A stretch of DNA of 64,000 bases from IMG/VR virus record IMGVR_UViG_3300001782_000005, positions 124,001-188,000 of that record; one strand, 5' to 3'. Position numbers and translations under genes: made by a program. Below the pieces are notes generated by a model that was not told the DNA's origin, searched no databases, and was given only the letters and a program-made list of their open reading frames with translations. This document shows positions 1 through 62,590 of the stretch, piece after piece (position 1 is the stretch's first letter; each line of letters begins with the position of its first letter).

Positions 1-97
1 CACCACTTACATCGTGAAACTCAGTGACAAAATCTTCATAGGATAACTCTTTTAACCGCAGTTTATTCTTCCAAACTGCAGCATAATTTATTGCCAT
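1..97 (-). CDS. Hypothetical protein, runs off the window edge (MAINYAAVWKNK...)
   Basis: ATG at 97 with GAGGT RBS and an upstream GAACAAA motif; frame open to position 1; not in the ORF track. Confidence 0.6.
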   Translation of the reverse strand, partial: MAINYAAVWKNKLRLKELSYEDFVTEFHDVSG

Positions 98-164
98 AAA
101 TACCTCAATTCACGATAGTAACATTTTTAATTTGTTCTTAAAGAAACAAAAAAAAGAGTAGTTC

Positions 165-190
165 AAAAAATAAGGGGACAGTGCCCCTTA
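165..190 (-). terminator. Intrinsic terminator for minus-strand transcription
   Basis: TAAGGGG/CCCCTTA stem (171-190) with an A-tract on its left, i.e. a U-tract on the minus strand. Confidence 0.6.
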
Positions 191-517
191 CTTCACTTCG
201 AATCTAATTCTGAGCTAAAACGAACTAGCTGCCCACACAATAAACTTTGATGCCTTAATTGTGCAGAAGCCAATGATAATGATGGTCCATGAGATAACAC
301 CACCCATTATCATGAGTTCAGACAGGAATCCCATCCAATCTCCAAACTTTTCAGACTTAGTTGCTTCTTTCACTTCTATCCTCCTTGAGAATTATCTTAG
401 TATATGCCAGCCGCTCGCCCCATGAACACTCCGATAATGAAAGGCCAGAATATTACAAGAGCGATAACTAGGGATATACTAATGGCAAGAACTGTTGAAA
501 GAACAATCTCTTTGAAT

Positions 518-895
518 TTACTCATCTCTTCCATCTCGATCCTCCTTGAGGATTGGAATCTCATCACCATCAGCCAAAATTTCCAATAGACGACCTAATA
601 CCACATGGTCAAGACCTTCAATAGGAGTATGGATTACTTGAACATCATCTGGAAGTTCAGCTGCACGAGTATGAGGAAGAATTGCTTCCAGGACACTTAT
701 GTGAGTTTCCATCGACTCTAATAGGTTATCTCGTATTGGATGCCTTGATCTACTAGACTCGATAAGGTCTTTAGCATTCTTTACTTCCTCAATTTTATAC
801 TCAAGAGTTGCTGTTAGATCCATAAGCACCTCCTGCGAGAGTTTTCTCTCTTTCTCTTTCAAGGTAAGCATTACGACAGTAATTTGAACACTCAA
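518..895 (-). CDS. Hypothetical protein (true start probably downstream, at MDLTAT)
   Basis: ORF in minus-strand operon; GGAGG RBS before the internal Met. Confidence 0.55.
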   Translation of the reverse strand: MSVQITVVMLTLKEKERKLSQEVLMDLTATLEYKIEEVKNAKDLIESSRSRHPIRDNLLESMETHISVLEAILPHTRAAELPDDVQVIHTPIEGLDHVVLGRLLEILADGDEIPILKEDRDGRDE

Positions 896-1088
896 TATCA
901 GTGGGTTGAAGTTCGCCCTCTACGAAATTAAACCTCTGAGGACAAGTAACTTCAACTCCTTCAAAATAGACCTCTATAAACTTAACTCCGCAGTGACTAC
1001 AATTTCCATTTACATACTTTAATGCTTTCCTAACTCTCTCGATATGACCACACACTAAACAAATCACATAATTAACTTTAATTTCCAT
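801..1088 (-). CDS. Small Zn-ribbon protein
   Basis: CLVC...CSHC; AAGGAGG RBS; first gene after the 14-bp motif. Confidence 0.6.
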   Translation of the reverse strand: MEIKVNYVICLVCGHIERVRKALKYVNGNCSHCGVKFIEVYFEGVEVTCPQRFNFVEGELQPTDIECSNYCRNAYLEREREKTLAGGAYGSNSNS

Positions 1089-1135
1089 TGGTATTATCCT
1101 CCTTTAAAAAGTTTACAAACACAGCCCTATCATTG

Positions 1136-1149
1136 ATTAATATATATAG
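1136..1149 (-). promoter_or_regulatory. Conserved putative early promoter CTATATATATTAAT (copy 1)
   Basis: Exact 14-mer seen five times, always intergenic and upstream of minus-strand genes. Confidence 0.75.
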
Positions 1150-1200
1150 TTTTAGATCGTTATAAGTAGACAAAAAAATAAGCGGCAAAATTAAGCCCGC

Positions 1201-1452
1201 TCATCCTCTATATTTTACATCTTTACGCCAAGTATTTAAATCTGATGTACACCCAGCACCAACATAGATCATTCTTGCAAATGCTCTCTTCTCCCTAGCC
1301 TGTTTACACCAATAACGACCAGCCTCTTCATCCCACATAAGTTTATTACAACGCATATCTTCATCAACCCAATTATGAAAAAGAGCAGCAAAACATGGAA
1401 TTTTAAGGCAGCAATAACCACAACCAACACATGGTTGATAATTTTCATTCAT
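1201..1452 (-). CDS. CxxCxxCC (YkgJ-like) Cys-cluster protein
   Basis: PCVGCGYCC...C...C pattern. Confidence 0.6.
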   Translation of the reverse strand: MNENYQPCVGCGYCCLKIPCFAALFHNWVDEDMRCNKLMWDEEAGRYWCKQAREKRAFARMIYVGAGCTSDLNTWRKDVKYRG

Positions 1453-1476
1453 TAATTAATCTCCTGGAAAAAAATA

Positions 1477-1542
1477 AGGCAGCAACCAAGCAGGGGCATG
1501 GCGGTACCCAAAAAGGGTAACACTTCAACTCAGTTGCTGCCT
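1477..1542 (-). other. Intergenic branched stem-loop element A
   Basis: AGGCAGCAAC (1477-1486) / GTTGCTGCCT (1533-1542) enclosing a TACCC/GGGTA hairpin. Confidence 0.55.
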
Positions 1543-1800
1543 AATTTATTATCTGTGACAAATCGAAGTCCTAGTTCTAGGACCTCTTCTTCTTTTTCTT
1601 TTCTTCTTAAGTCTAATACCGGCCTCACTAGCAAGATCTGGATTTTCTCCCACTATTCTGTAGACTTCCGACCTATCCATGCCCAATTCGCTCGCTGCCC
1701 CCAGTGGCCCGAGTTTAGCCACTAATTGACAAACTCTTTGCGCCCTTATAATTCGAAAATCCTTGGGTTCTTGCATGAGCATTCTCCCAGAAAAAATAAA

Positions 1801-1866
1801 GCAACAACCAGGAGAGGGGGAGGGTTTTTGGACTCATTAAAAACCCTTAACTGTCCCGGTTGTTGC
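1801..1866 (-). other. Intergenic branched stem-loop element B
   Basis: GCAACAACC/GGTTGTTGC outer stem and AGGGTTTTT/AAAAACCCT inner stem; flank resembles element A. Confidence 0.6.
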
Positions 1867-2437
1867 CAATTAGTTAATTTCTGAATTTGATCTCCTTTTC
1901 TTTATGGCCATTCTCAATGGTTTGATCTCCCCCCATAGGGCAACCACACAGTAACCTGTAAAAATTCCAAGGTAATCATGAGCAATATCCATCATATCGA
2001 ATTTACCAACTCCAAGATTGAATTGAATCACCTCAGTTACAAATGGAGCTGCAAGAAGAATGGTAATAAAAAACCAATCTTCGAGAGACCAGATTAAAAT
2101 TGAAACAACAGCGAATATAATCGTGTGATATGCATATGCCTGCGGCACACGACCACCTCCTTTCAAATATATCTACAACACCTCCTTATCTACGATACCA
2201 CGGTATATATTTCCCACCATCCACATTATCTATCCTAACAACATGGCGATAAGGAAATATAACCGTTGGCCTTATCCTTGGATTTCGGTTGGCAGGATTA
2301 TCGACGTTAGAAAGTACTAGACCTTGTTCTCCATAATATGCCTTATCCGCAGTAACTCTTCGAATCTCCTTACCATCCCAATAAGTCACAACAACAGCCA
2401 AGGATAATACCGCTAGAAATGCCATTAATTTCTTCAC

Positions 2438-3181
2438 TTAGTCACCTCCTCTCTTAATTATTGTTGAAGATGAAGAAGATGATCCATCTTGAGTTCCTCT
2501 ACCCGGGTCCGTTGTTGTCGTACCAGTACCTCGACCAGAATCTGGAGGTATAGTACTACCAGGCGGAAGGGTTGAACCAGGATCTTTAGGAATTACTGTT
2601 TCTAATATTTTAGGGTCAATAGATGACTCCTCATCTTCACCTGTTGTAACATCAAAAGGGCACTTTATTTCAAAACAATGAAGTTTTCCATCTATCTCGT
2701 AACAACGCCAGCATGTGGGTCCCTCATCGTCATCGTCACCCATGCTTGTCCCTTGATCATTTATCCCAAGACCACTATAGTCATAAGTCTCAGGTTTTTT
2801 CTCCCCTCCCTTCATCATAGCAGTTATGACACCATTAGGACTTGAATAAACAACAAAAGTTCTACTTACTTTCGGAGTGAAACCAAATTTATAACGATAG
2901 ACGTCAGCTTTTTTCACTTCCGAGGGAAGACGAGAACCTCTTATACCATCACCAAAGCGATACTCTGGTGCATTATCCGGATTATAATCTGGAGCAGGCA
3001 TAAGGATAATCATAATTTCATCCTTATCAGCAGGAGAAATATCATGGTCTCTTACGGTCTTTCGACTATTATCCAGAGGTTCAGTCTCTTTACTAATAAG
3101 ATCGCCCTTAGTCATAGCAATAGCTATACCTACACTTAAAGCGAGAAAGACTGCCAAAAGCAGTATTGTTAATTTCTTCAT
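2438..3181 (-). CDS. Secreted/periplasmic hypothetical protein
   Basis: N-terminal signal peptide; Pro/Ser/Thr/Gly-rich tail; GGAGG RBS. Confidence 0.6.
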   Translation of the reverse strand: MKKLTILLLAVFLALSVGIAIAMTKGDLISKETEPLDNSRKTVRDHDISPADKDEIMIILMPAPDYNPDNAPEYRFGDGIRGSRLPSEVKKADVYRYKFGFTPKVSRTFVVYSSPNGVITAMMKGGEKKPETYDYSGLGINDQGTSMGDDDDEGPTCWRCYEIDGKLHCFEIKCPFDVTTGEDEESSIDPKILETVIPKDPGSTLPPGSTIPPDSGRGTGTTTTDPGRGTQDGSSSSSSTIIKRGGD

Positions 3182-3189
3182 AACACCTC

Positions 3190-3435
3190 CTATAAATCGG
3201 GCGGTTTTCCAATGCCTGGAAAATTAAAATTACCGCTTCTAACGGCTCTTTGATCTGCTTCAAGAGCTTCTTTAAATTTTGGATGTTTCCTTTCCTTCTC
3301 GTCACAATCCATACATAAAGTATCTTCGTTAAAATACGACATAGTAGTTATGCCAGTACCTTTTCCACACCGGTCACATTTAGTCATCACCACTCCTCTT
3401 ATCAAGAAACATATTAACTGATAAAGTAGCATCAC
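3190..3435 (-). CDS. Small Zn-finger phage protein (start probably MTKCDRC)
   Basis: CDRC...CMDC. Confidence 0.55.
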   Translation of the reverse strand: MMLLYQLICFLIRGVVMTKCDRCGKGTGITTMSYFNEDTLCMDCDEKERKHPKFKEALEADQRAVRSGNFNFPGIGKPPDL

Positions 3436-4152
3436 GAACAGTTTTAACTAGTTCATCTTCATCTCGACCATAGAAGATAACAATCTCCAACCAGTCAAAA
3501 CCCAGATCCTTACCTTTAATAAAAATAGGCATCCCCTCTTTAAGTCTTTTAACATTCTCCTCAGAGATTCCGAGACCTACTAAAGTACTCTTTTCTCCTA
3601 TTGAAGTAAATTTAATCAATATACTCCTCCTTATCCCAGTTATGACTGTCATACATATAACAACGTTTATCTTGATACCACTTCTTCCAAGGTTCAGTAT
3701 AGATTTTACACTTTAACTTTCCCCTTACCTCTCTCATGTATGGACATCTTCTGGGACCCAATTTAGGACATTTCTCGGCAACGGTATGTAGAGTATAGGT
3801 TGTTTCTTCATGCCTCTTTTCTTCAGGATCAATATCTGGTACGGATTTCCCAAATTTCTTAGTCTTTCTTGCCAAAATTATCCCCCTACCATTTAGCACC
3901 AAATAAAGGACCAAGCGACCAAATAAAAAGAAAAAAGAGGGCAGTTAGAATTAATGCTTCAATCGCTTTTCTTTTTAGTGATTTCATACTGCCCTCTCTC
4001 CTTTTCTATATCTCACAATTAAATCAACAGCTTCATCTGTAGTAAATCCAGCTAATCGTAAGATATCATACTGTGCTTTGGTCAAAACAGTCATACAAGC
4101 AGGTATCCAGTCGAGGGTCTTTCTCTTTTTACTAGTTTTCACTTTACCCTCC

Positions 4153-4761
4153 TTACTGAATCTCCTTGACTTTATCAACTCCAGTAGGTTTATCTTTCTT
4201 CGGTTTATCTTTTTCAGGAGTTTGGGTATCCCCCAGATTAGGAGCTTGAACTCCAACCGAATCGGCATCACCTACTCCAGCACCAGGTTCTTGTACTGGT
4301 CCAACTCCACCTTTTTCAAGAATATCCTTAACCTGTGGAGGATATTGAGGACCAGGAGTATCCGGTTTATTTGTATCAACTTGAGCAAGAAGCAAAGAAC
4401 TTTCTTGCCAAATCAACTGAATATGCCTATCTTCGGAAACAGACATAAGTAAACGATTTGTACTTACATCTCGGACAATAACTTCCCTTGGATAATATGC
4501 CCAAGATAGATCTTGAGCAAAATTTAACCTTTGCTGATTATTAAGGTTATGATATTGCTCACCAACAAAAACATCCACTCTTTCATCCCTAAGAAGAGTA
4601 TCTCTAATAAGGTAACGATAGGGTTCAAGTCTTTCCTCAATTGTCATAGTATCTGGACTCTTATGAGCACAACCGGGTAAAAAGAAAACCACAAAGGCCA
4701 AAACCAAAACAATTGAAAGAAGCAATAACTCAAAAAATGATGTTTCATTTTTATATGACAT
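4153..4761 (-). CDS. Putative lipoprotein
   Basis: Hydrophobic N-terminus ending in lipobox-like LPGC. Confidence 0.55.
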   Translation of the reverse strand: MSYKNETSFFELLLLSIVLVLAFVVFFLPGCAHKSPDTMTIEERLEPYRYLIRDTLLRDERVDVFVGEQYHNLNNQQRLNFAQDLSWAYYPREVIVRDVSTNRLLMSVSEDRHIQLIWQESSLLLAQVDTNKPDTPGPQYPPQVKDILEKGGVGPVQEPGAGVGDADSVGVQAPNLGDTQTPEKDKPKKDKPTGVDKVKEIQ

Positions 4762-5054
4762 TCTTCCCTCCTTCTCTATAATCTAAGGAGGGCCTCATAT
4801 CTACAAAATCTTCGACCATCCTTAGTTATCACATCTACTAATGCAATTTTTACACCAAGAGGAACAATTTTCTTTGTAAGAAATTTTGCTCTTTCCTTCC
4901 ATTCTTTAGACCAACTTTCCACTTGTGTAGCAATTATATCAATCTGCTTACTAATGGGGTCGTTAGCATCAGCTTCAGCAATAAAAACAGTATTTAGATC
5001 CGAAAATTGATTAACCAATAGAGCGGGAATTTCCCTATGAAAAGAACCCATAAT

Positions 5055-5549
5055 CTATCTTTCTTCCTCCTTAAATCTCGCACCAAAACCTAAACCCATG
5101 TCCTCAATTTTTACACTCACATAATCAGGTTTGACACTTGTAAAATAGGTCACTAACCTCTCCTCTCCTGGTGCAATAGAACACGGATAGACTCCAGTTT
5201 GAGTTACTTGGCCTCCCTCGGTAATCTTAGAGTGAATAAATCCAGTAAAAACTTTTTCATCCCGATTGAGAACAGAAAAATAAACCTTATACCAATTTTC
5301 CCGAATCTCTTTCACAATGGCCGTACCCATAGTTAAGTTCATCGGCCTCACAGATTCAGTAACAGGTTTAGAAATTTTAACAATTGGAACCACTTTTGGT
5401 TCAGGTTTAACCTTCATCCACTTGATAAGATTATTCGCCACAGATATGGCTAAAAGGACAGCTAGTATATAGAGAAGAATCTCAATACTAGATAAATCCT
5501 TATCCAAGTCGTCAGAATAATATTTTCTATATCTTGGTCTTGCCCCCAT
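5055..5549 (-). CDS. Single-pass membrane protein
   Basis: Start reassigned to ATG 5549 (GAGGAG RBS); one TM helix. Confidence 0.55.
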   Translation of the reverse strand: MGARPRYRKYYSDDLDKDLSSIEILLYILAVLLAISVANNLIKWMKVKPEPKVVPIVKISKPVTESVRPMNLTMGTAIVKEIRENWYKVYFSVLNRDEKVFTGFIHSKITEGGQVTQTGVYPCSIAPGEERLVTYFTSVKPDYVSVKIEDMGLGFGARFKEEER

Positions 5550-5571
5550 TTTTAACTCCTCTAAAAAAGAA

Positions 5572-5641
5572 CCCGCCGACAGGAAAAAGTAAGTGGGGGG
5601 CGCACATCCCCACTTACACAAGGAGAGATCCCGCCGGCGGG
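5572..5641 (-). other. Intergenic branched stem-loop element C
   Basis: CCCGCCG/CGGCGGG outer stem extended by G-U pairs on the minus strand; inner 10-bp GTAAGTGGGG/CCCCACTTAC. Confidence 0.6.
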
Positions 5642-5647
5642 AATTGG

Positions 5648-6295
5648 TTATTCTAACGGATCCCCATCAAGTTCATCCATGGGGATAGGAGCATAACGCC
5701 AGTCTGTATTCTGAGAAATGGTCACAATGGGAGCTTTCAGGAGATAAACTTCATTGTTGATCCGAAATCTCAAATTACCACCAGCTTTAAATGCTTCTAT
5801 ATCGTCCTCCGACACCTCCCCAGTAAAGAAATAAAGCGGTCTTCCTCCTGGAGAAAATAATCTAATATCAACCTGCTTACTGAGAACTATTGGCATCTCA
5901 TCTGGAGGCATTATCTGCTCAGAAGAAACACCATAATCTTCCTCTTCAGCTGCTAATATCGCAAAACGATATGGAATAGGTTTCACAATGATAATCGGAG
6001 CATCAATTAACCCCTTCATTGCGGACGCACCGCCATACCTGAGGTCATCTCCATATACAAAAGCTAGCTCATCTTCTCCTGTGATCCATGCTTTTGTATT
6101 CGGTCGGTAAAATATACGACCATGCTCAGTTATAGCCCAGACCTCATAGAAACGGATACGAGGATAATAAATTGTATCAACTGCTTCCGCCTCATCTCCA
6201 CCATCATTGGCAGATGCACCTCCAGTGCAGCCATAAGTGAAGCATAAAGCTACCACCAACAACAGTAAAGCGATAATCTTAGGTATTTGTTTCAT
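5648..6295 (-). CDS. Putative lipoprotein
   Basis: Start at ATG 6295 with AAGGAG RBS; signal peptide ending YGC. Confidence 0.6.
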   Translation of the reverse strand: MKQIPKIIALLLLVVALCFTYGCTGGASANDGGDEAEAVDTIYYPRIRFYEVWAITEHGRIFYRPNTKAWITGEDELAFVYGDDLRYGGASAMKGLIDAPIIIVKPIPYRFAILAAEEEDYGVSSEQIMPPDEMPIVLSKQVDIRLFSPGGRPLYFFTGEVSEDDIEAFKAGGNLRFRINNEVYLLKAPIVTISQNTDWRYAPIPMDELDGDPLE

Positions 6296-6560
6296 AATGC
6301 TACTCCTTACTTTAGTATAGTTTGGTAATTTAGCTCGTCGGAGAGCCTCCGGGGATGAAGATGAATCTATCATCCCAAGCTACCTGCATTTTTAATGGGC
6401 CAAGTCATCCGATACCATTTTCCCACAAGTGCGCTCGCCTCAGAACGAGGTAGATAGAATATCTATATGAGATATCTTGCAATTAGCACAATACTTCTTC
6501 TCAACATCAACCGGGTGGTAACTTGTCTTATTACAAATTAGACACTTGATAGCTAAAGTA

Positions 6561-6755
6561 TCACCCTTCTTGATTATTTCGTAAGTTTTTTCTTTCATAT
6601 ATATTAACCTCTTCATAGAGATCACGTAATTGAGATTTGATTCCAGCAACCACAGCTTGCTGAAGAATTAGTCTATCTTCCTCAACCTTCAATGACTTTT
6701 CAAACTTTTTTATCTGTTCTTTAGTTACTTTATACTGAGTATCATTCTCAATCAT
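6561..6755 (-). CDS. Short helical protein resembling the N-terminal domain of XRE/HigA-like regulators, without an HTH
   Basis: MIENDTQYKVTKEQI...SQLRDL..EV..YE pattern (recalled family). Confidence 0.45.
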   Translation of the reverse strand: MIENDTQYKVTKEQIKKFEKSLKVEEDRLILQQAVVAGIKSQLRDLYEEVNIYERKNLRNNQEG

Positions 6756-6766
6756 TGACTCCCTCT

Positions 6767-7171
6767 CTAAGGTTTTATCACACCATCAGGTGGAGCAACT
6801 CCCCACCTAATATAATGAACTAATGAGCGACAATTTGTTGTTACCTTCTCAAATGCTTGACCACCCCCATAACAATTGACAGAAAACTCAAAGTTTCCCC
6901 TTTTCTCCTCTTTCTTAACGACATAACCAACTGTAACAGAATTTTCAGGCGGTCGGTACGTCTGAATAGTGTCTTCAGTGATCACCTGGATACTAGTAGA
7001 ACTATAATTAGTTATCCAGTTTATGCCTCTATTCCAGGCAGCATCTGCTTTCCTCTTTGGAATTTCAAATACAAAAGGCTCTTGTGCAATAGTATCAATA
7101 TAATTCTGCCTCTCAGGACTCATCACACACCCAACTAGAAATATGATCATAATTGAAAGAATCTTCTTCAT
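6767..7171 (-). CDS. Putative lipoprotein
   Basis: MKK-hydrophobic-LVGC lipobox. Confidence 0.65.
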   Translation of the reverse strand: MKKILSIMIIFLVGCVMSPERQNYIDTIAQEPFVFEIPKRKADAAWNRGINWITNYSSTSIQVITEDTIQTYRPPENSVTVGYVVKKEEKRGNFEFSVNCYGGGQAFEKVTTNCRSLVHYIRWGVAPPDGVIKP

Positions 7172-8077
7172 AGTAATTTTATCCTCCTTTCAAATTAACT
7201 TTTTCTACAGTCACCTCCTAAAAATTAATATTAAAGATATAGTAATTGAGAGTATACAAAACCACATACTTCCAGCGAAGAAATATAAAAGATCAGTACC
7301 ATTCTCAGCCAGATCACTCCACGTCCAATCTTTTACAGGATGATCTTCAGGTAATATAGGTTTTGACGCTCTTGCAATTAACCATGGAAATAAGATAAAT
7401 ATCTTCTTCAACCATAATTCCATGAGTCTATCCTTGCTCAAGATCTTCTGTTCCAATAGGTTCAAGTCTTCCAACTCCTGCTTGAGAGACCCTTTTACAA
7501 TCAAAACAAATGAAGAAAATCGGGAAAGTTCCAGAAGGATTAGCATATTTCTCTATCAGCAAATACACATATTTATCACATTCATAACACCTTGAAGAAT
7601 CTGATTTTTGGAGTACATATTCTGGCGGTCTCACGGTATATCTCCTTTTAAATTAATTACATCTCCTTTCAAGTTGATACCAATACTAGCAAGATCTCTT
7701 TTAAGAAGTCCAAACACTTGAGGTATATTTTTAACAATCGCATAAAGTGACATATAAATATGCTCAGGTTGCATACGAGAAGCTATTGCGTATTGTTTTT
7801 CATGCTCACAGATAAGTAAGGTATTTAAACCATATTCCTCATATAAAAAATCACAGGTTCCTGTAATCATTGGATTATACTTCTCAACAAAATCTTCAGT
7901 GCCAGCTCCTATCTTCTTAACAATCACATAGTGATCTTTTAACTCAGCGGCCAAATCTCTAGCTGCTTCAATTTCTTCACGAACTGACTCAACATATGGA
8001 TTCTCAGCTAATTCCATAAGCATATTAACCAGTTCATAAAATTTATTCATATATTCCACAAGTTACCTCCATAAGAA

Positions 8078-8203
8078 ATCGCTCGGGATCGTGGTCTCCA
8101 ATACCACAGTTACCACTACTCGTTGTTTCTTGGGATAATTTAGTGTTCTGAAGCGGCCACCCTCCCTTCTCCAGAATTTTAGGATTATTCGATCCCGAGC
8201 GAT
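8078..8203 (-). other. Intergenic structured element with a perfect 14-bp closing inverted repeat
   Basis: ATCGCTCGGGATCG (8078-8091) / CGATCCCGAGCGAT (8190-8203), with internal hairpins. Confidence 0.65.
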
Positions 8204-8208
8204 ATTTG

Positions 8209-8544
8209 TTAAAGATACCTCTTTGTCGGAACTCTGAGGGTCTTTATCGTTGAAGGTTTCTTCAAAATACCAACATCGCCCATCTGATATTCAACCCACT
8301 TCTCCTCACCACACGGACGCCAATACTTATACTCAGTAATGCTATGGGTGACAGTTTTTCCATCTGCCTGAGTAACTTTACTCTCTTTTACCTCCATCTT
8401 AAATTCAATACAAGTCCCATCGTCAATCTGAACGCTCAGCACATTTCCTTGACCCTTAATTACAACATCTTGAGCAAATGATACTCCAGAGATTATAAAA
8501 AAGAGTAAGAATAAAAACAGTAACATCCTCCGCAAGTTAATCAC
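8209..8544 (-). CDS. Secreted small beta-rich protein
   Basis: Signal peptide (SFA-Q); AAGGAGG RBS. Confidence 0.55.
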   Translation of the reverse strand: MINLRRMLLFLFLLFFIISGVSFAQDVVIKGQGNVLSVQIDDGTCIEFKMEVKESKVTQADGKTVTHSITEYKYWRPCGEEKWVEYQMGDVGILKKPSTIKTLRVPTKRYL

Positions 8545-9268
8545 CTCCTTTCATCATAACGTACCTTGCTCATAACTAGGCTCTATCAGGTAATATATTT
8601 AGGTGAGAGTGGAAGTAGTTCTGTCCCACTTCAAAGGTTGGATAAGATTAATAGCAGTTGTAATTCTGAGTTCCTCAACCCAGATGTAACAATCATCCAT
8701 ATCTCCCTCGAAACCAAATCTACTTATAATTTCATTTATCACCGCTTTACTAGGTAAAGATTTTGAATCTCCGAGAGATATGGAGATATGTCTACACAGA
8801 CCAATTGCCTGATCCTCTATTGAATAGACAACTCGAAATCCTCTTGGAATACTACAAACGTAGCGTCTGTCATCTCCAATTGGTCTTATATTCTCTGCTT
8901 CCATTGCTTCCAATGTAGCATGAGAAATAATATTTTCTTCAGCAAATTTAATAATTCTTGCTATATTTTTCTCGACTGTTTTATCAATGTATATTCTTCT
9001 CCCACTAGCTCCGTGCCTTTTTCTTATATTCGTTAATGTTGCCATTATATTTCCGTCCCGGTTCAATTGGTTTCGGTATAATATAATCATATGGGTGAGG
9101 TTTTCTAGCTCTCTTCTCCAAAAATTGTTTACGAGTCTCGTCTAATTCGCTATCATTTCTTCCCAACCGTTTACAGTAGAGATACCCGACAACAATAGAA
9201 GAAATAAGAGCAAATGCTAAAAGAGCAAGAAAACTCATTGCAATATCAAAAATACCCATAATCTCTCC

Positions 9269-10711
9269 TTAAAAATCAGAATTCATCAGTTGTTGCATTT
9301 CATTAAATTCATCACCTAATTTATTGGCAAAATATAGAGTATAGAATCTTATCATATCCTCTTCAATCTTTGAAAGAGGAATACCAACAAGTTTCTGACC
9401 ATCAAAAATATTACAAAAACTAACTCTTGATATTCTACCAACAAAATAACTCAAGACTTTATGTGGGTATAACTTTGTTCGAAAACCAAGAAAGTTATCT
9501 GTATCATTCTGTATATTTATATAATTGTGAATCCCTTTCAATTTATATGTTGTGGTAATCGAAGGTTGTTCAAGCGGATAATAATCAAGTAGGGAAAACA
9601 AATTCCCATACTGACTCTTAAATGTCCTCTTTAACAAACCATGTAAATATACAGAAAGAACAGCAGCATGATCAGGTGAAATAGTCTTGAAATGAATATA
9701 GGGTATATTTGTTAACCTTGATAAAACAGGAAAGACAAGACATTCACATAAAGGAGATACGTGTTTTATCTGACCGGCCCTAGTTTGAAATTCTACTATC
9801 GAAGTGTCAGAATTTTTCTTATCATCGAAAGTAGACACAGTTAGTCTCTCTATCATGTCATATATCTGCTTAAATGCAACGCCTTTTAATCTTCCCAACG
9901 TATCATTATAAGAATATGTCTTGAGATTATTAACGCTCTGTGAGTGAATATCCTCAGTTGCAACAGAATCATCATATATAATTGACCCTTTATAAACTGA
10001 TCTCAAAAACCACTTCACAGACTCATCAACAACCCCGACAAAATAAGTAATTGGATTTCTACCATCACAGAGAACAAGAATTGAGTTCATAATAAAATTA
10101 AATATCTCAATCACATGGACATCAATTCCCTTTCCCTGTATCATCTTTATATAATCCCACATATACCGATCTGTAAGATTATATCGAAAAGTTTTTGTTT
10201 TAATCACGTTGAAAATTTTGAAAACTATCTCAGTTTCCAAAATATCATCCGCTAACTGATTATAAATCTTCTTATGCAAACGATCACTCAATCTCATGTT
10301 CTCACTATTCGAAATTAATGCATATAATTTCAAATAGCTAGATAATTGAACTATTCTTTCAATTTCATCTGCGGTAAATAAAATAGAGGTTTTCTTTGCC
10401 TTGGATTCATCAACGAATTGATTAAAATCCATATTCTCCAACTGCATGGTCATATCAACATATTTCTTAATCATTGGAATATTTTCGGATAAACTAACAA
10501 ATCTCTTCTCAGGGTCATCCACATATTTGGAAAGAAAATCATAGAACCAATCATCAAATTCTTGACCACAGAGTTCTGAAACTCTCTTAATAAAACTCGT
10601 AACTATATCAAATTTATTTGTTATAGAAGATGCTGTTAACTCGAGAAAGAACTCACGGTCTCCCACAGTCACAACCCAACTTTTTGAATCCTCTTGTCTG
10701 AAGTCTATCAA
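9269..10711 (-). CDS. Putative promoter-specificity (sigma-like) subunit of phage non-virion RNA polymerase, AR9 gp226 / phiKZ gp68 type
   Basis: 480 aa, helical; segments DFNQ...SSYLKLYALI, KIFNVIKTK...TDRYMWDYIK and NPITYFVGVV...KWFL are collinear with AR9 gp226 as I recall it; alignment not computed. Confidence 0.6.
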   Translation of the reverse strand: MIDFRQEDSKSWVVTVGDREFFLELTASSITNKFDIVTSFIKRVSELCGQEFDDWFYDFLSKYVDDPEKRFVSLSENIPMIKKYVDMTMQLENMDFNQFVDESKAKKTSILFTADEIERIVQLSSYLKLYALISNSENMRLSDRLHKKIYNQLADDILETEIVFKIFNVIKTKTFRYNLTDRYMWDYIKMIQGKGIDVHVIEIFNFIMNSILVLCDGRNPITYFVGVVDESVKWFLRSVYKGSIIYDDSVATEDIHSQSVNNLKTYSYNDTLGRLKGVAFKQIYDMIERLTVSTFDDKKNSDTSIVEFQTRAGQIKHVSPLCECLVFPVLSRLTNIPYIHFKTISPDHAAVLSVYLHGLLKRTFKSQYGNLFSLLDYYPLEQPSITTTYKLKGIHNYINIQNDTDNFLGFRTKLYPHKVLSYFVGRISRVSFCNIFDGQKLVGIPLSKIEEDMIRFYTLYFANKLGDEFNEMQQLMNSDF

Positions 10712-11313
10712 CTTTTTTTCCTCCCCCTAATCTTCGAGATTATATCCCTTATCCTCTTGAGTTTCGTCTTATCCCCTTCATTAATTTCAATAAATTCTGG
10801 AAGCGCAGATTCATCTAAAATGAGAGCTTCAATTTCATCTACTTCTTTCTGCTCTTCTGCCTTTCTTCGATCATCTACACTTCTATAAATTTTTATACTA
10901 CTCTCCAGTTTGTCTTTCTTATACTGAAAATAAAGTTGAACATCGACAGGATCAGTAAGTCGCCCCATAACTTCATTATCATCTCGAATTTGTGTACAAT
11001 AGTTTAATACCCACTCCGATTCCACAATTTTCTCTCTCATATCAGGTTCATCTCTAACATGCTGACAATACATATATGCCCATTTTGAAGTTGTAATCAT
11101 CTCTTTTAACTCAGGGTCAATCTCTTTATTATCATCGAATTTATCATCTCTAAGTTTAAGGCATTGATAATATGCCCACTGAGAAACTGCATCTTCAGTA
11201 ATCCACATTTTTGTCTCAGTAAGCATAGGGTTAACATCATCTTCTAATAATCCGTATTTCATCATATTCTTACGTTCTTTCACTTCATGATCATCAGACA
11301 TTTCTCTCTCCAA
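10708..11313 (-). CDS. Helical-repeat protein (W/Y-A-x-x-Y-C repeats)
   Basis: Repeats of about 23 aa such as SKWAYMYCQHVRDEPDMREKIVE. Confidence 0.6.
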   Translation of the reverse strand: MEREMSDDHEVKERKNMMKYGLLEDDVNPMLTETKMWITEDAVSQWAYYQCLKLRDDKFDDNKEIDPELKEMITTSKWAYMYCQHVRDEPDMREKIVESEWVLNYCTQIRDDNEVMGRLTDPVDVQLYFQYKKDKLESSIKIYRSVDDRRKAEEQKEVDEIEALILDESALPEFIEINEGDKTKLKRIRDIISKIRGRKKS

Positions 11314-11710
11314 TTATTCGACCCATCACTCCTCTTCTAATTAAGAGTTCAGGATATTTACCTGCATATTCTTCAGCCTTTTTCGTATCTTTCTCAACAA
11401 AACGATAATAATAATACTTCCAAGGTCTTTCAGTAATTCTCTCTTTCATATCTTCGTCATTGGAGACATCTTCACAATAGAACGCTGCAAACTCTGATTC
11501 TGTAATTAAATCTCTAATTTCTGACCGATTCTCAATATATTTACAATAAATAAAAGCATATTTAGATCCTTTAATCATCGACCAAACTTCTGGATCATCC
11601 TCTACGTTATAACAATAATCAAATGCCCATTTATCAATCTGCTCCTGCTCGATCCACACTCCAATTGCTTCTCCTTTCATAAGATAATAAAAAAAACGAA
11701 CAAACCACAT
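11294..11710 (-). CDS. Helical-repeat protein, paralog of the adjacent gene
   Basis: KWAFDYC / KYAFIYC / EFAAFYC repeats. Confidence 0.6.
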   Translation of the reverse strand: MWFVRFFYYLMKGEAIGVWIEQEQIDKWAFDYCYNVEDDPEVWSMIKGSKYAFIYCKYIENRSEIRDLITESEFAAFYCEDVSNDEDMKERITERPWKYYYYRFVEKDTKKAEEYAGKYPELLIRRGVMGRIIGERNV

Positions 11711-11726
11711 ATACCTTAATCTATTA

Positions 11727-11740
11727 ATTAATATATATAG
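11727..11740 (-). promoter_or_regulatory. Putative early promoter CTATATATATTAAT (copy 2)
   Basis: Exact motif upstream of the operon containing the gp226-like gene. Confidence 0.75.
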
Positions 11741-11778
11741 AAAAAGTGTTCAAACTGGAAGGTAATTTGATTGGAAGG

Positions 11779-12309
11779 TTATTTATTTACAGCCTTATCT
11801 ATTCTATTTGCTAAAGTATCCCACCACTTTAACCATTCATTATGTTTAGCACATTTATAATATAGTGGGGCAGCACAGATAATTCTTGGTCTCTTCTGCA
11901 TTCCAATATCCCATCCGGCTCTGGTGTTTTTATCCATATTTAATTTTCTTATAACATCCTCTACTTTATTCTTACTTTCAATATTAGAGGTTAAGCGAAA
12001 ACCAACATAAGTTGGCCAATCCAATTTCATCTCTCCAGGAGGACCATGACCTTCACAACTAGACCTAATCTCCACATTGTCTATTCGATTAATGTCACTC
12101 AACCATTTATCTTTTAAATGCTTATCAATATAATAACCTTTATAAAGTCTCTCCTCTGCATCAGGTGCTCGACCAGATCTCCAACCAGGATACTTCTTAC
12201 CATGCACAAGTTCCCAAGCAAATGTAGGAGCAGGTTTTTTACCAGGCCGAGGGCCCCTAACGTAATGCTGATCCTGAAGATAACTTAAATAACGATCAAT
12301 TATTAACAT
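11779..12309 (-). CDS. Hypothetical protein with SSCEGH motif
   Basis: RSSCEGH, loosely like Tyw3-fold SSCxG proteins; N-terminal IIDRYLSYLQ. Confidence 0.45.
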   Translation of the reverse strand: MLIIDRYLSYLQDQHYVRGPRPGKKPAPTFAWELVHGKKYPGWRSGRAPDAEERLYKGYYIDKHLKDKWLSDINRIDNVEIRSSCEGHGPPGEMKLDWPTYVGFRLTSNIESKNKVEDVIRKLNMDKNTRAGWDIGMQKRPRIICAAPLYYKCAKHNEWLKWWDTLANRIDKAVNK

Positions 12310-36728: not shown

Positions 36729-37757
36729 CTACTTTTTTATTTTCCCTATCTTATAATCTTTCTCAATAATGCCTACCTTCTTATCTCCCCTAGTATGCAT
36801 TGGAACCCAATATACACCTTTATGACGTCCAAAAAGACCTCGTCCCTCTCGACAATCTCGAAAGTGACCTCGACAAATATGAAGAGCTCGTCTCAAACCT
36901 ACTTTATCACTCTTCCCCTCATATTTCAAAATTTTCCTTGCTGCATCTATTTCGAGAGTTTTAAATTTCATTAGAGGTCTTTTTCCCTTTTTCTCTCGAT
37001 ATTTGTTAATTCTCACTTCACTTTTTCTCTCAACTGCTTCAACATTCTTACAGTGTAGTAAAGATACTCCAAAGAGAGAAGGAAGTATAGTTGTGAAGAA
37101 AATAAGATTATTAACATCTTCACCATCATCGAATCCTGCTAATGTAGGAGCAGGTTTTACAACTGGAAGGTGATCAAATTCACTAACTCTCTTAGTCGCA
37201 AACAGTTCTTGACCTTGATCATCAAGGTAACTATTATATATACCGGCACAACTATAACCTTCCTTGAATTTCATACTTTTTAAAAAGATTATATGAATAA
37301 CAACCCAATTAATTAAGCTATCATCCATATGAACTAATCTTCCTTCTACTTCTAGTTGATGACTCCAAAGACCAATTCTAGAGATTCGTCGAAATAATTT
37401 CCCATGATCTTTTTTTGAAAGGCCAAGCGAAAATGCACCAACTCTCTTTACCCTAGAGAAATAATTCTTTACCAGTTCATTAGCAATTGATATAGTAGGA
37501 ACTGTAAACTCAAACCAACTAAATGGCCACGGTGGCGATAAGCAAGGAAATATTTTACTATCCCACCAAGACCACACATCCTTCTCGCCAGTATATATCC
37601 ATTTTGAGACGTTAGATAACTCAACAAAGGTAGTATGACCAAGTAGAACTTCCTCTACATCTATACTTATCTCATGGAAAATATAAGCACTAAGTTGCTC
37701 AATTAAAAACTTTATATCATAGATAATATCATCTAGATATTCATCAATAAACATCAC
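36729..37757 (-). CDS. Conserved phage protein with C-terminal H..RGH.R motif
   Basis: LHICRGHFR...WV..H.RG...G...KDY pattern common in phage hypotheticals. Confidence 0.55.
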   Translation of the reverse strand: MMFIDEYLDDIIYDIKFLIEQLSAYIFHEISIDVEEVLLGHTTFVELSNVSKWIYTGEKDVWSWWDSKIFPCLSPPWPFSWFEFTVPTISIANELVKNYFSRVKRVGAFSLGLSKKDHGKLFRRISRIGLWSHQLEVEGRLVHMDDSLINWVVIHIIFLKSMKFKEGYSCAGIYNSYLDDQGQELFATKRVSEFDHLPVVKPAPTLAGFDDGEDVNNLIFFTTILPSLFGVSLLHCKNVEAVERKSEVRINKYREKKGKRPLMKFKTLEIDAARKILKYEGKSDKVGLRRALHICRGHFRDCREGRGLFGRHKGVYWVPMHTRGDKKVGIIEKDYKIGKIKK

Positions 37758-38505: not shown

Positions 38506-38519
38506 ATTAATATATATAG
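38506..38519 (-). promoter_or_regulatory. Putative early promoter CTATATATATTAAT (copy 3)
   Basis: Exact motif at the major strand switch. Confidence 0.75.
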
Positions 38520-53300: not shown

Positions 53301-53314
53301 ATTAATATATATAG
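53301..53314 (-). promoter_or_regulatory. Putative early promoter CTATATATATTAAT (copy 4)
   Basis: Exact motif heading the 50.8-53.2 kb minus-strand island. Confidence 0.75.
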
Positions 53315-62576: not shown

Positions 62577-62590
62577 ATTAATATATATAG
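62577..62590 (-). promoter_or_regulatory. Putative early promoter CTATATATATTAAT (copy 5)
   Basis: Exact motif heading the 61.2-62.5 kb island. Confidence 0.75.

What the first reader, a model, noticed from the sequence alone, without database searches (positions are those of the whole stretch)
1468..5645. Family of branched intergenic RNA elements in the accessory operon
Seen: elements at 1477-1542, 1801-1866 and 5572-5641 share one design: a long outer stem, an inner hairpin, then on the minus strand a U-tract and the next RBS. In B and C the outer stems extend through G-U pairs only on the minus strand and end in GGA/UCC. A and B share the flank AAAAAATAA(G/A)GCA(G/A)CAACCA. B and C carry CUCUCCU, an anti-Shine-Dalgarno-like sequence. 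Inference: RNase III-type processing sites, attenuators or excised small RNAs, possibly an undescribed phage RNA motif.
Basis: partly seen in the sequence, partly recalled or inferred. Interest (0 to 1): 0.65.

Follow-up and report, generated by a model that had tools for sequence, protein, structure and literature searches.

The report
Compound terminator-like hairpins between phage genes
Three unusually long two-storey RNA hairpins, each followed by a U-run, sit between small genes of an uncultured marine jumbo phage and most likely act as leaky transcription stops; one of them is conserved in related phages, with compensating base changes and an invariant loop that a plain stop signal does not explain.

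Summary
On the minus (coding) strand, A (1477-1542), B (1800-1867) and C (5572-5641) each fold into a 13-15 bp lower stem, an asymmetric internal loop and an upper hairpin. A U-run follows, then the next gene's ribosome site about 10-20 nt on. None of the three is truly branched.

The window lies in a 277-kb phage that carries two sets of multisubunit RNA polymerase genes, as phiKZ-like phages do.

C is a real conserved RNA structure. In the 8 aligned variants, 97% of cells pair and 12 of 22 pairs show compensatory change. The stem base and loop core GUGCGCC are invariant in those 8, and the loop core and a U-run of at least 6 recur in all 11 lineages.

A and B are paralogues that share the outer stem GCAGCAAC/GUUGCUGC, which also occurs in two related phage lineages. 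Each element stays with its upstream gene when gene order is shuffled. A and B carry the phage's general terminator tail (stem + UUAUUUUU).

No Rfam family matches. No RNA data exist.

Best reading: gene-end intrinsic terminators or attenuators with compound hairpins that also cap mRNA 3' ends. RNase III processing is not excluded.

Unexplained: the exact complement of C's loop core is invariant about 0.8 kb upstream, at the head of the same cistron's leader.

The parts
1477..1542 (-). Element A: a two-storey hairpin at the 3' end of the small HTH gene. It has a 15-bp lower stem with G-U pairs, a 4/9-nt internal loop and an upper hairpin with a U5 loop.
   Evidence: Folds. An orthologue follows the HTH gene in L149 (3841-3916), with the same outer stem and one compensatory change in the upper stem.
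1468..1476 (-). U-run of A (UAUUUUUUU; with base 1477, the last of the hairpin, it reads UUAUUUUUUU). It is followed by GGAG (1464-1461) and the ATG at 1452.
   Evidence: Sequence. Stem + UUAUUUUU is the phage's generic terminator tail: 12 intergenic hairpin-preceded copies.
1800..1867 (-). Element B: a two-storey hairpin at the 3' end of the VanZ-like gene. It has a 14-bp lower stem, a short middle helix and a 9-bp upper stem.
   Evidence: The same slot after the VanZ-like gene holds an A/B-type hairpin in L012 (8329-8412) and a larger branched element in L149 and L016.
1791..1799 (-). U-run of B (UUAUUUUUU). It is followed by GGGAGA and the ATG at 1776 (75 aa; the ATG at 1782 lies too close to the ribosome site).
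   Evidence: One metagenome (X6) has one extra A/U in this run; there is no other variation.
5572..5641 (-). Element C: 13-bp lower stem (5641-5629 with 5584-5572), an 11/4-nt pyrimidine-rich internal loop, a 10-bp upper stem and a 9-nt apical loop (5607-5599).
   Evidence: Folds. 8 aligned variants give 97.2% paired cells, 12 of 22 pairs compensatory, and 0 of 500 shuffles as good. RNAalifold gives the same structure. Three further variants were found.
5599..5607 (-). Apical loop of C, A(U/A)GUGCGCC. The core GUGCGCC is invariant in all 11 lineages.
   Evidence: Neutral yardstick: only 20% of third codon positions in the adjacent gene are invariant, and the longest invariant run there is 8 nt.
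5563..5571 (-). U-run of C (UUCUUUUUU). It is followed by GAGGAG and the ATG at 5549.
   Evidence: A run of at least 6 U lies 0-3 nt after the stem in all 11 variants.
6429..6434 (-). Leader motif GCGCAC, the exact complement of C's loop core. It lies 0-8 nt after, or within the last codons of, the small Zn-finger gene upstream of the lipoprotein gene, about 0.8 kb upstream of C.
   Evidence: It is the only invariant 6-nt run in the leader alignment of 9 lineages. Predicted duplexes are -11.6 to -15.5 kcal/mol in the seven lineages scored with the true loop.
5648..6295 (-). Lipoprotein-like gene (215 aa), bracketed by the leader motif and element C.
   Evidence: ORF. No Pfam or PHROG family. 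Homologues are 41-48% identical to the window protein.
1549..1776 (-). Small HTH-like gene flanked by B (upstream) and A (downstream).
   Evidence: Its orthologue in L149 (54% identity) is again followed by an A-type hairpin, but at a different place in the gene order.
1170..1200 (-). Ordinary short terminator (hairpin + UUAUUUUUUU) that ends the stretch. A promoter-like 14-mer follows at 1136-1149.
11727..11740 (-). Nearest upstream copy of the promoter-like 14-mer CTATATATATTAAT. C, B and A all lie inside the 10.5 kb between this copy and the one at 1136.
   Evidence: 15 exact copies genome-wide, all intergenic. No copy of the second upstream motif GAACAAA lies in an intergenic spot within the stretch.

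Best explanation
A, B and C are gene-end intrinsic terminators of a phiKZ-like jumbo phage, built with an unusually long compound hairpin.

Proposed mechanism:
1. As the phage or host RNA polymerase leaves a cistron, the upper hairpin forms first.
2. The GC-rich lower stem then closes right next to the U-run.
3. Part of the polymerases release there.
4. The rest read on into the next gene, whose ribosome site begins a few bases after the U-run.

The elements would therefore work as attenuators that step expression down, or gate it in time, along a roughly 10-kb early transcription unit. The released or processed RNAs would end in a very stable hairpin that shields them from 3' exonucleases.

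Shown here: the structures, their conservation and covariation, the terminator hallmarks, and their attachment to the upstream gene.

Inferred: actual termination, its leakiness and the stabilising effect.

In C, the invariant loop suggests an extra layer of recognition by a protein or by another RNA segment.
For: Structure and terminator hallmarks:
- A GC-rich stem base abuts a U-run in all three elements.
- In all 11 C variants the U-run is kept, and in the 8 aligned variants the stem base CCCGC/GCGGG is invariant, while the rest of both stems covaries.
- A and B carry the tail UUAUUUUU. In this genome that tail follows 12 intergenic hairpins, including ordinary short and bidirectional terminators.
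- phiKZ's mapped intrinsic terminators likewise share a stem followed by TTAT (PMC10914365). In 201phi2-1, conserved terminator motifs combine into elongated hairpins (PMC11512511).

Phage type:
- The phage encodes two beta and two beta' homologues.

Position and linkage:
- The elements start 2-6 nt after stop codons.
- They travel with their upstream gene when gene order changes between relatives.

Leakiness:
- The only recognisable promoter copies bracket the whole stretch, at 11727 and 1136.
- About 17 genes lie downstream of C and have no recognisable promoter of their own, so they would need read-through.
- Several other compound hairpins in the genome (37008-37083, 69132-69185, 77733-77793, 244111-244153) are also followed directly by a ribosome site.
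Against: - No transcript ends are available. No RNA run holds this phage.
- Hairpins of 66-70 nt with 23-25 stacked pairs are far outside the usual terminator range. Reported means are stems of 7-9 bp and loops of 3-5 nt (PMC10325885).
- A plain terminator does not need an invariant 9-nt loop, a conserved unpaired pyrimidine strand or a conserved G-U pair.
- Promoter classes that I did not recognise could lie between the elements. That would remove the argument for leakiness.
- My genome-wide comparison of hairpin length with distance to the next gene was too noisy to show any association.
Confidence: 0.55

Rival explanations
1. The elements are RNase III-type processing sites, like the intercistronic sites of T7 early mRNA. 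A host double-strand RNase cuts in or near the internal loop. This splits the polycistronic RNA and leaves a protective hairpin on the upstream piece.
For: - The stacked helices span 23-25 bp (about two turns) with an asymmetric internal loop between two roughly 10-bp helices. From my own knowledge, that is the layout of T7 R1.1-type sites.
- In C the internal loop is kept unpaired and asymmetric (9-13 nt against 2-5 nt) across variants.
- The elements lie exactly between cistrons.
Against: - The conserved U-run and the GC clamp beside it are not needed for RNase III.
- The phage has no RNase III domain, and the host is unknown.
- If this phage secludes transcription as phiKZ does, cutting could happen only after export.
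- No cleavage data exist.
- This reading is compatible with termination rather than exclusive of it.
Confidence: 0.15
2. C is a recognition element, not just a stop signal. Its invariant loop is read by a phage or host factor, or it base-pairs with the invariant GCGCAC at the head of the lipoprotein gene's leader. That pairing would close the cistron into a loop and so tune termination, translation or decay of that mRNA.
For: - The loop core is invariant in 11 lineages while both stems covary. The neutral yardstick is 20% invariance at third codon positions.
- The exact complement is the only invariant 6-mer in the leader of all 9 lineages that reach it, whether it lies in coding or in non-coding sequence there.
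- It is the only such site on that strand in each locus.
- Predicted duplexes are 6-8 bp, -11.6 to -15.5 kcal/mol, in the seven lineages scored with the true loop.
Against: - Both partners are invariant, so no covariation proves the pairing.
- A 6-7 nt complement within 1.5 kb is at chance level in a single genome. For A, B, E and C, upstream complements by length alone match the background.
- On double-stranded DNA the two motifs are the same site in opposite orientation, so a DNA-level reading fits equally well.
- No analogous partner was found for A or B.
Confidence: 0.18
3. The A/B-type hairpins are chiefly recombination junctions, like the PeSL cassettes of T4-type phages. They would be short conserved sequences at the borders of small accessory genes that let the phage swap, insert or delete genes.
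For: - The same outer stem sits after different genes in different phages: the VanZ-like gene in the window and L012, the HTH gene in the window and L149.
- Gene order differs between relatives exactly around these elements.
- B and A flank a single small gene as direct repeats.
- PeSLs are terminator-containing repeats that flank ORFans in hyperplastic regions (PMC2839356, PMC4122927).
Against: - There are only two copies in 277 kb.
- No promoter half is attached.
- No recombinase was found: no tyrosine recombinase in the genome.
- C is single-copy and syntenic.
- Recombination at conserved terminators may be a by-product rather than the function.
Confidence: 0.08

Closest known systems
Conserved intrinsic terminators of phiKZ and 201phi2-1 (PMC10914365, PMC11512511)
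   Same: - The phages have their own multisubunit RNA polymerases.
- The terminators are intergenic hairpins followed by a TTAT-type tail.
- Sequence motifs are shared between terminators of different genes.
- Some hairpins are elongated by a second motif.
   Different: - The stem sequences are unrelated to the phiKZ motif.
- The hairpins here are two-storey, 66-70 nt long, with large internal loops.
- C has an invariant apical loop, and its tail is UUCU, not UUAU.
- No transcript mapping exists for this phage.
Long-stem, antitermination-resistant terminator TerR of plasmid pLS20 (PMC10325885)
   Same: An intrinsic terminator whose stem (15 bp) is far longer than average, and whose length has a regulatory meaning.
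   Different: - TerR is a single continuous stem with a 7-nt loop at the end of an operon.
- The elements here lie inside a transcription unit, are interrupted by large loops, and are followed at once by the next gene.
- No antitermination system was identified here: there is no NusG-like gene.
RNase III processing sites of T7 early mRNA (own knowledge, not tested here)
   Same: They are intercistronic, consist of two helices of about 10 bp separated by an asymmetric internal loop, and leave a 3' hairpin on the upstream RNA.
   Different: T7 sites have no U-run and no GC clamp beside one. No RNase III is encoded here, and the host is unknown.
PeSL promoter-terminator cassettes of T4-type phages (PMC2839356, PMC4122927)
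   Same: They are conserved intergenic stem-loops that act as terminators or attenuators. They flank small ORFans in a variable region and mark the points where gene content differs between relatives.
   Different: - PeSLs include a strong early promoter and occur in many copies.
- A and B have no promoter and occur as two copies.
- The nearest thing to a PeSL in the window is the short terminator plus promoter 14-mer at 1136-1200.
Intercistronic UUCG-type hairpins of phage T4 (own knowledge)
   Same: They are very stable hairpins between phage cistrons with a conserved loop sequence. C's loop can be read as G(UGCG)C, a UNCG-like tetraloop with flanking unpaired bases.
   Different: The T4 hairpins are short. 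RNAfold does not predict the tetraloop form here. In C the invariance extends beyond the six bases of the tetraloop.

Membership tests
Intrinsic (factor-independent) terminator | GC-rich hairpin whose base lies within a few nt of a U-run | tested here: met
   For C, the U-run recurs in 11 of 11 variants and the stem base is invariant in the 8 aligned.
Intrinsic (factor-independent) terminator | Lies downstream of a stop codon on the coding strand | tested here: met
   The elements lie 2-6 nt after the stops at 1549, 1870 and 5648.
Intrinsic (factor-independent) terminator | Usual size (stem about 7-9 bp, loop 3-5 nt; PMC10325885) | tested here: not met
   The hairpins are 66-70 nt with 23-25 pairs in two or three tiers.
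Intrinsic (factor-independent) terminator | RNA 3' ends form in the U-run | not testable with these tools
   No RNA run holds the phage. The laid runs were DNA contigs.
phiKZ-type conserved terminator motif | Stem-loop followed by TTAT | tested here: met
   A and B have UUAU directly after the stem. 12 intergenic hairpins in the genome have the same tail. C has UUCU.
phiKZ-type conserved terminator motif | Stem sequence of the CCYCCCC...GGGRRGG type (PMC10914365) | tested here: not met
   The outer stems are GCAGCAAC/GUUGCUGC (A, B) and CCCGCCGGCGGG (C).
RNase III processing site | About two turns of stacked double-stranded RNA, often with an internal loop | tested here: met
   23-25 stacked pairs with an asymmetric internal loop.
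RNase III processing site | Site-specific cleavage by RNase III | not testable with these tools
   No RNA data. There is no phage RNase III.
PeSL cassette | Early promoter joined to the stem-loop | tested here: not met
   Neither promoter-like motif is adjacent to A, B or C.
PeSL cassette | Repeated motif at the borders of variable small genes | tested here: inconclusive
   The A/B outer stem recurs at gene-order breakpoints in relatives, but there are only 2 copies per genome.
Integron attC site | Integron integrase, plus RYYYAAC / GTTRRRY core sites | tested here: not met
   No tyrosine recombinase in the genome. The stems share only AAC...GTT with the cores, and C lacks even that.
Any Rfam family | Score at or above the gathering threshold | tested here: not met
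   0 hits in the window. In 1-7000, only sub-threshold chance hits.

The most novel reading that the evidence does not exclude
Element C is half of a conserved long-range RNA contact. Its invariant apical loop (GUGCGCC), displayed on a terminator hairpin at the 3' end of the lipoprotein cistron, would kiss the invariant GCGCAC at the very start of that cistron's leader, about 0.8 kb upstream. This would close the cistron into a loop and couple termination, decay or translation of this mRNA to its own 5' end. It would do so in a phage that brings its own RNA polymerases.
Probability: 0.17. Interest if true: 0.7.

Novelty: new variant of a known kind. Interest (0 to 1): 0.45.

Why it matters
Transcription stop and processing signals of phiKZ-like jumbo phages have been mapped in only a few cultured Pseudomonas and Bacillus phages.

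This work gives three things for an uncultured marine branch:
- a set of conserved, covarying gene-end RNA structures;
- a general terminator tail;
- two promoter-like motifs.

If the compound hairpins are tunable stops, they show how such phages grade expression along long early units without internal promoters.

C offers a compact, testable case of a terminator hairpin that carries a sequence-specific loop.

The A/B type shows conserved terminators acting as seams where accessory genes are reshuffled.

Tried and rejected
Searches that found nothing useful:
- The shared A/B 20-mer in IMG/VR gave 5 hits, none with a hairpin.
- The A-type stem pattern in IMG/VR gave at least 119 loci, all coding-sequence chance matches. 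None combined a strong hairpin with a U-run.
- A stricter pattern in JGI metagenomes returned only the same phage at 100% identity.
- Single-protein scans of IMG/VR with four proteins found no relatives.
- blastn against deposited phages found nothing.

Population variation:
- Contigs of four metagenomes were laid on 1100-6400 (5,301 letters). The population is clonal, so there is no covariation from microdiversity.

Ideas tested and dropped:
- Integron attC or MITE: no recombinase, no core sites, only two copies.
- Anti-Shine-Dalgarno regulation: the heptamer is rare on the sense strand but is not conserved in C's relatives.
- A general rule that hairpin interiors pair with upstream sequence: matches are at background level for A, B, C and E and marginal for D and H.
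- An association between hairpin length and closeness of the next gene: my crude gene calls made the test uninformative.
- tRNA-like or known RNA families: none.
- A small ORF starting in C's loop: the spacing is wrong, and the stems covary as RNA, not as codons.


Full report
**Setting**

The window is bases 124001-188000 of a 277,131-bp IMG/VR virus record with direct terminal repeats. The same phage occurs in marine sediment and seawater metagenomes from several studies; none of the listed runs is RNA.

The genome encodes two beta-like and two beta'-like RNA polymerase subunits. This is the hallmark of phiKZ/AR9-type jumbo phages, which transcribe with a virion and a non-virion polymerase (PMC10612078, PMC5312081). 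It has no RNase III domain, no NusG-like gene and no tyrosine recombinase.

In window 1-38000 all genes lie on the minus strand. The stretch that holds the finding is a run of small genes, many with signal-peptide, lipoprotein or membrane character. None matches a Pfam or PHROG family apart from a weak VanZ-like hit.

**The observation**

| Element | Window | Energy (kcal/mol) | z-score | Lower stem |
|---|---|---|---|---|
| A | 1477-1542 | -33.8 | -4.5 | 15 bp |
| B | 1800-1867 | -33.6 | -3.7 | 14 bp |
| C | 5572-5641 | -44.1 | -5.2 | 13 bp |

- The energies and z-scores are for 90-100-nt stretches that include each hairpin's flanks.
- In each, the lower stem is followed by an asymmetric internal loop and an upper hairpin. 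The centroid equals the MFE.
- None has a multiloop, so they are two-storey hairpins, not branched structures.
- Each starts 2-6 nt after a stop codon. A U-run follows, then a GGAG-type ribosome site and the next start.
- In a scan of the whole genome for hairpins that end at a T-run, C, B and A rank second to fourth.
- The shared A/B flank is exact and unique in the window.
- The strand asymmetry holds in energy for A and C but not for B.

**They carry the phage's terminator signature**

The tail UUAUUUUU occurs 68 times in the genome. 23 copies are intergenic, although only about 10% of the genome is intergenic. 12 of those intergenic copies directly follow a hairpin. That group includes short, ordinary and bidirectional terminators as well as A and B.

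So the first half of the 'shared flank' of A and B is a general signal. phiKZ's mapped intrinsic terminators likewise share a stem followed by TTAT (PMC10914365). In 201phi2-1, terminator motifs combine into elongated hairpins (PMC11512511).

Ordinary terminators of this phage are 24-45 nt long. The window has two: one at 172-188 and one at about 1170-1200.

**Transcription units**

Two upstream motifs stand out:
- A 14-mer, CTATATATATTAAT, occurs 15 times exactly. Every copy is intergenic and lies 40-60 nt upstream of a ribosome site.
- A second motif, GAACAAA followed by an A-rich run, is 9-fold enriched upstream of genes and has 35 intergenic copies.

On the minus strand of window 1-12000, the only intergenic copies are the 14-mers at 11727 and 1136 and a GAACAAA at 137. 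C, B and A therefore lie inside a roughly 10.5-kb stretch with one recognisable promoter at its head and an ordinary terminator at its tail.

If the three were tight stops, about 17 downstream genes would have no recognised promoter. This is my reason for reading them as leaky stops. It is an inference, because promoter classes I did not recognise may exist.

Several other compound hairpins elsewhere in the genome are also followed at once by a ribosome site.

**C is a conserved RNA structure**

The 164-aa protein downstream of C has homologues at 62-68% identity. The lipoprotein upstream has homologues at 41-48% identity to the window protein.

Contigs that encode them carry a C-like element at the same place. 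Across 8 aligned distinct variants:
- 97.2% of cells form pairs.
- 12 of 22 pairs show changes on both sides.
- No shuffle out of 500 reaches the observed values.
- Sliding the partner by 1-3 columns drops pairing to 37-55% (on the MAFFT alignment).
- RNAalifold predicts the same structure independently.

Invariant in the 8 aligned variants: the stem base CCCGC/GCGGG and the loop core GUGCGCC. The loop core and a U-run of at least 6 U are also kept in the three further variants, 11 lineages in all. The following ribosome-site region is conserved in most. A G-U pair near the top of the lower stem is kept in 6 of the 8 aligned variants. The internal loop stays asymmetric and pyrimidine-rich, but its sequence drifts. 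The anti-Shine-Dalgarno heptamer survives in only 3 of the 8 aligned variants.

For scale, only 20% of third codon positions in the adjacent gene are invariant across the same 8 variants, and the longest invariant run there is 8 nt. The loop is therefore under selection for its sequence, which a plain terminator does not require.

C is single-copy in the genome.

**A and B**

The identity between A and B is confined to the outer stem arms and the tail; the interiors are unrelated. One stem position shows a G-C to A-U exchange.

The same outer stem occurs in two related lineages:
- L012-L014 (8329-8412 in L012);
- L149-L151 (3841-3916 in L149).

Orthology of the neighbouring genes gives these gene orders (Sec = secreted-protein gene, Cys = Cys-rich gene; numbers are lengths in aa):
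- Window: Sec83 - VanZ - B - HTH - A - Cys83.
- L149: Sec83 - VanZ - X - Cys80 - sigma-r4-like - HTH - A-type - 124.
- L012: Sec86 - VanZ - A/B-type - Lar-like - 133 - Cys84.

An A-type hairpin therefore always follows the HTH gene, and some structured element always follows the VanZ-like gene, while the order of these modules differs. A and its L149 orthologue also share the upper-stem sequence, with one compensatory U-A to A-U change.

The elements behave as 3' parts of their upstream genes. They coincide with the seams of gene shuffling, much like the terminator halves of PeSL cassettes in T4-type phages (PMC2839356, PMC4122927), but without the promoter half and with only two copies.

X is a roughly 110-nt, truly branched element with a covarying 10-13 bp outer stem, a U-run and a ribosome site. 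It occupies B's slot in L149 and L016.

**An unexplained partner for C's loop**

The exact complement of the loop core, GCGCAC (GGCGCAC in most lineages), lies about 760-830 nt upstream on the same strand in every lineage whose contig reaches that far.
- It sits at the end of, or just after, the small Zn-finger gene. That is the head of the leader of the lipoprotein gene whose 3' end carries C.
- It is the only invariant 6-nt run in the leader alignment of 9 lineages. It is invariant whether it falls in coding or in non-coding sequence.
- Predicted loop-leader duplexes are 6-8 bp at -11.6 to -15.5 kcal/mol in the seven lineages scored with the true loop; for L019 and L022 the script picked another site.

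Because both partners never vary, there is no covariation to prove pairing. The same pattern would arise if one double-stranded DNA site were kept in opposite orientation at both ends of the gene. A control showed that upstream complements of hairpin interiors are at background level for the other elements. This is therefore specific to C and rests on conservation alone.

**Verdict**

- The elements are best read as gene-end intrinsic terminators or attenuators with compound hairpins. This is a variant of a known kind in phiKZ-like phages.
- RNase III processing is a compatible alternative that I could not test.
- They do not form one family by sequence. A/B-type and C-type are separate; the C model scores the L012 A/B-type element at 22.5 bits and A at 14.5 bits.
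- C's invariant loop and its conserved complementary leader motif are the part that remains unexplained and is worth an experiment.

Noticed in passing
window 1136-1149, 11727-11740, 38506-38519, 53301-53314, 62577-62590 (minus strand): A promoter-like 14-mer, CTATATATATTAAT, has 15 exact copies genome-wide. All are intergenic and lie 40-60 nt upstream of a ribosome site. This is probably one promoter class of the phage's own polymerases, comparable to the AT-rich early promoters of phiKZ.
   Followed up: partly
window 137 (minus), 21154, 32482, 33887, 35687 (minus), 39810, 53337 (plus) and elsewhere in the genome: A second upstream motif, GAACAAA followed by an A-rich run, lies 20-35 nt before ribosome sites. 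It is 9-fold enriched upstream of genes, and 35 of its 87 copies are intergenic. It may be a second promoter class.
   Followed up: partly
window 3926-4005 (minus strand): A conserved hairpin pairs the ribosome site and start region of a small membrane ORF (about 33 aa) with a segment inside that ORF (GAGAGGGCAG with CUGCCCUCUU). It recurs in L012, L019 and L021 with compensatory changes. It looks like ribosome-site sequestration.
   Followed up: partly
L149 2832-2944; L016 8683-8800: A roughly 110-nt, truly branched element with 2-3 inner hairpins follows the VanZ-like gene in related phages. Its outer stem is 10-13 bp and covaries, and a U-run and ribosome site follow. It occupies the slot that B holds in the window.
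   Followed up: partly
genome 37008-37083, 69132-69185, 77733-77793, 244111-244153 (outside the window): These are further compound hairpins with a U-run followed directly by a ribosome site. The one at 37008-37083 is the most stable in the genome (-44 kcal/mol).
   Followed up: no
genome 81320-82543, 114109-115425, 85772-86200, 120136-120636 (just upstream of the window): Two beta-like and two beta'-like RNA polymerase genes are present. They indicate a phiKZ/AR9-type transcription system in this uncultured marine phage.
   Followed up: partly
window 1-6400: This is a dense run of small genes for secreted, lipoprotein-like or membrane proteins and Cys-rich mini-proteins. Nearly all have no family match. 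Gene content and order vary between related phages; examples are a Lar-like gene and a sigma-70 region 4-like gene found only in relatives.
   Followed up: partly
window 1790: One metagenome (X6) has one extra A in the A-run, which is the U-run of B. This is the only difference seen inside A, B or C in the four laid runs; the only other differences are three substitutions at 4914-4948 in X7.
   Followed up: no
window 6440-6500 (minus strand) and homologous places in L016 and L152: The 3' end of the small Zn-finger gene contains a near-perfect palindrome (stems of up to about 10 bp in L016 and L152). It lies just before the conserved GCGCAC motif.
   Followed up: no
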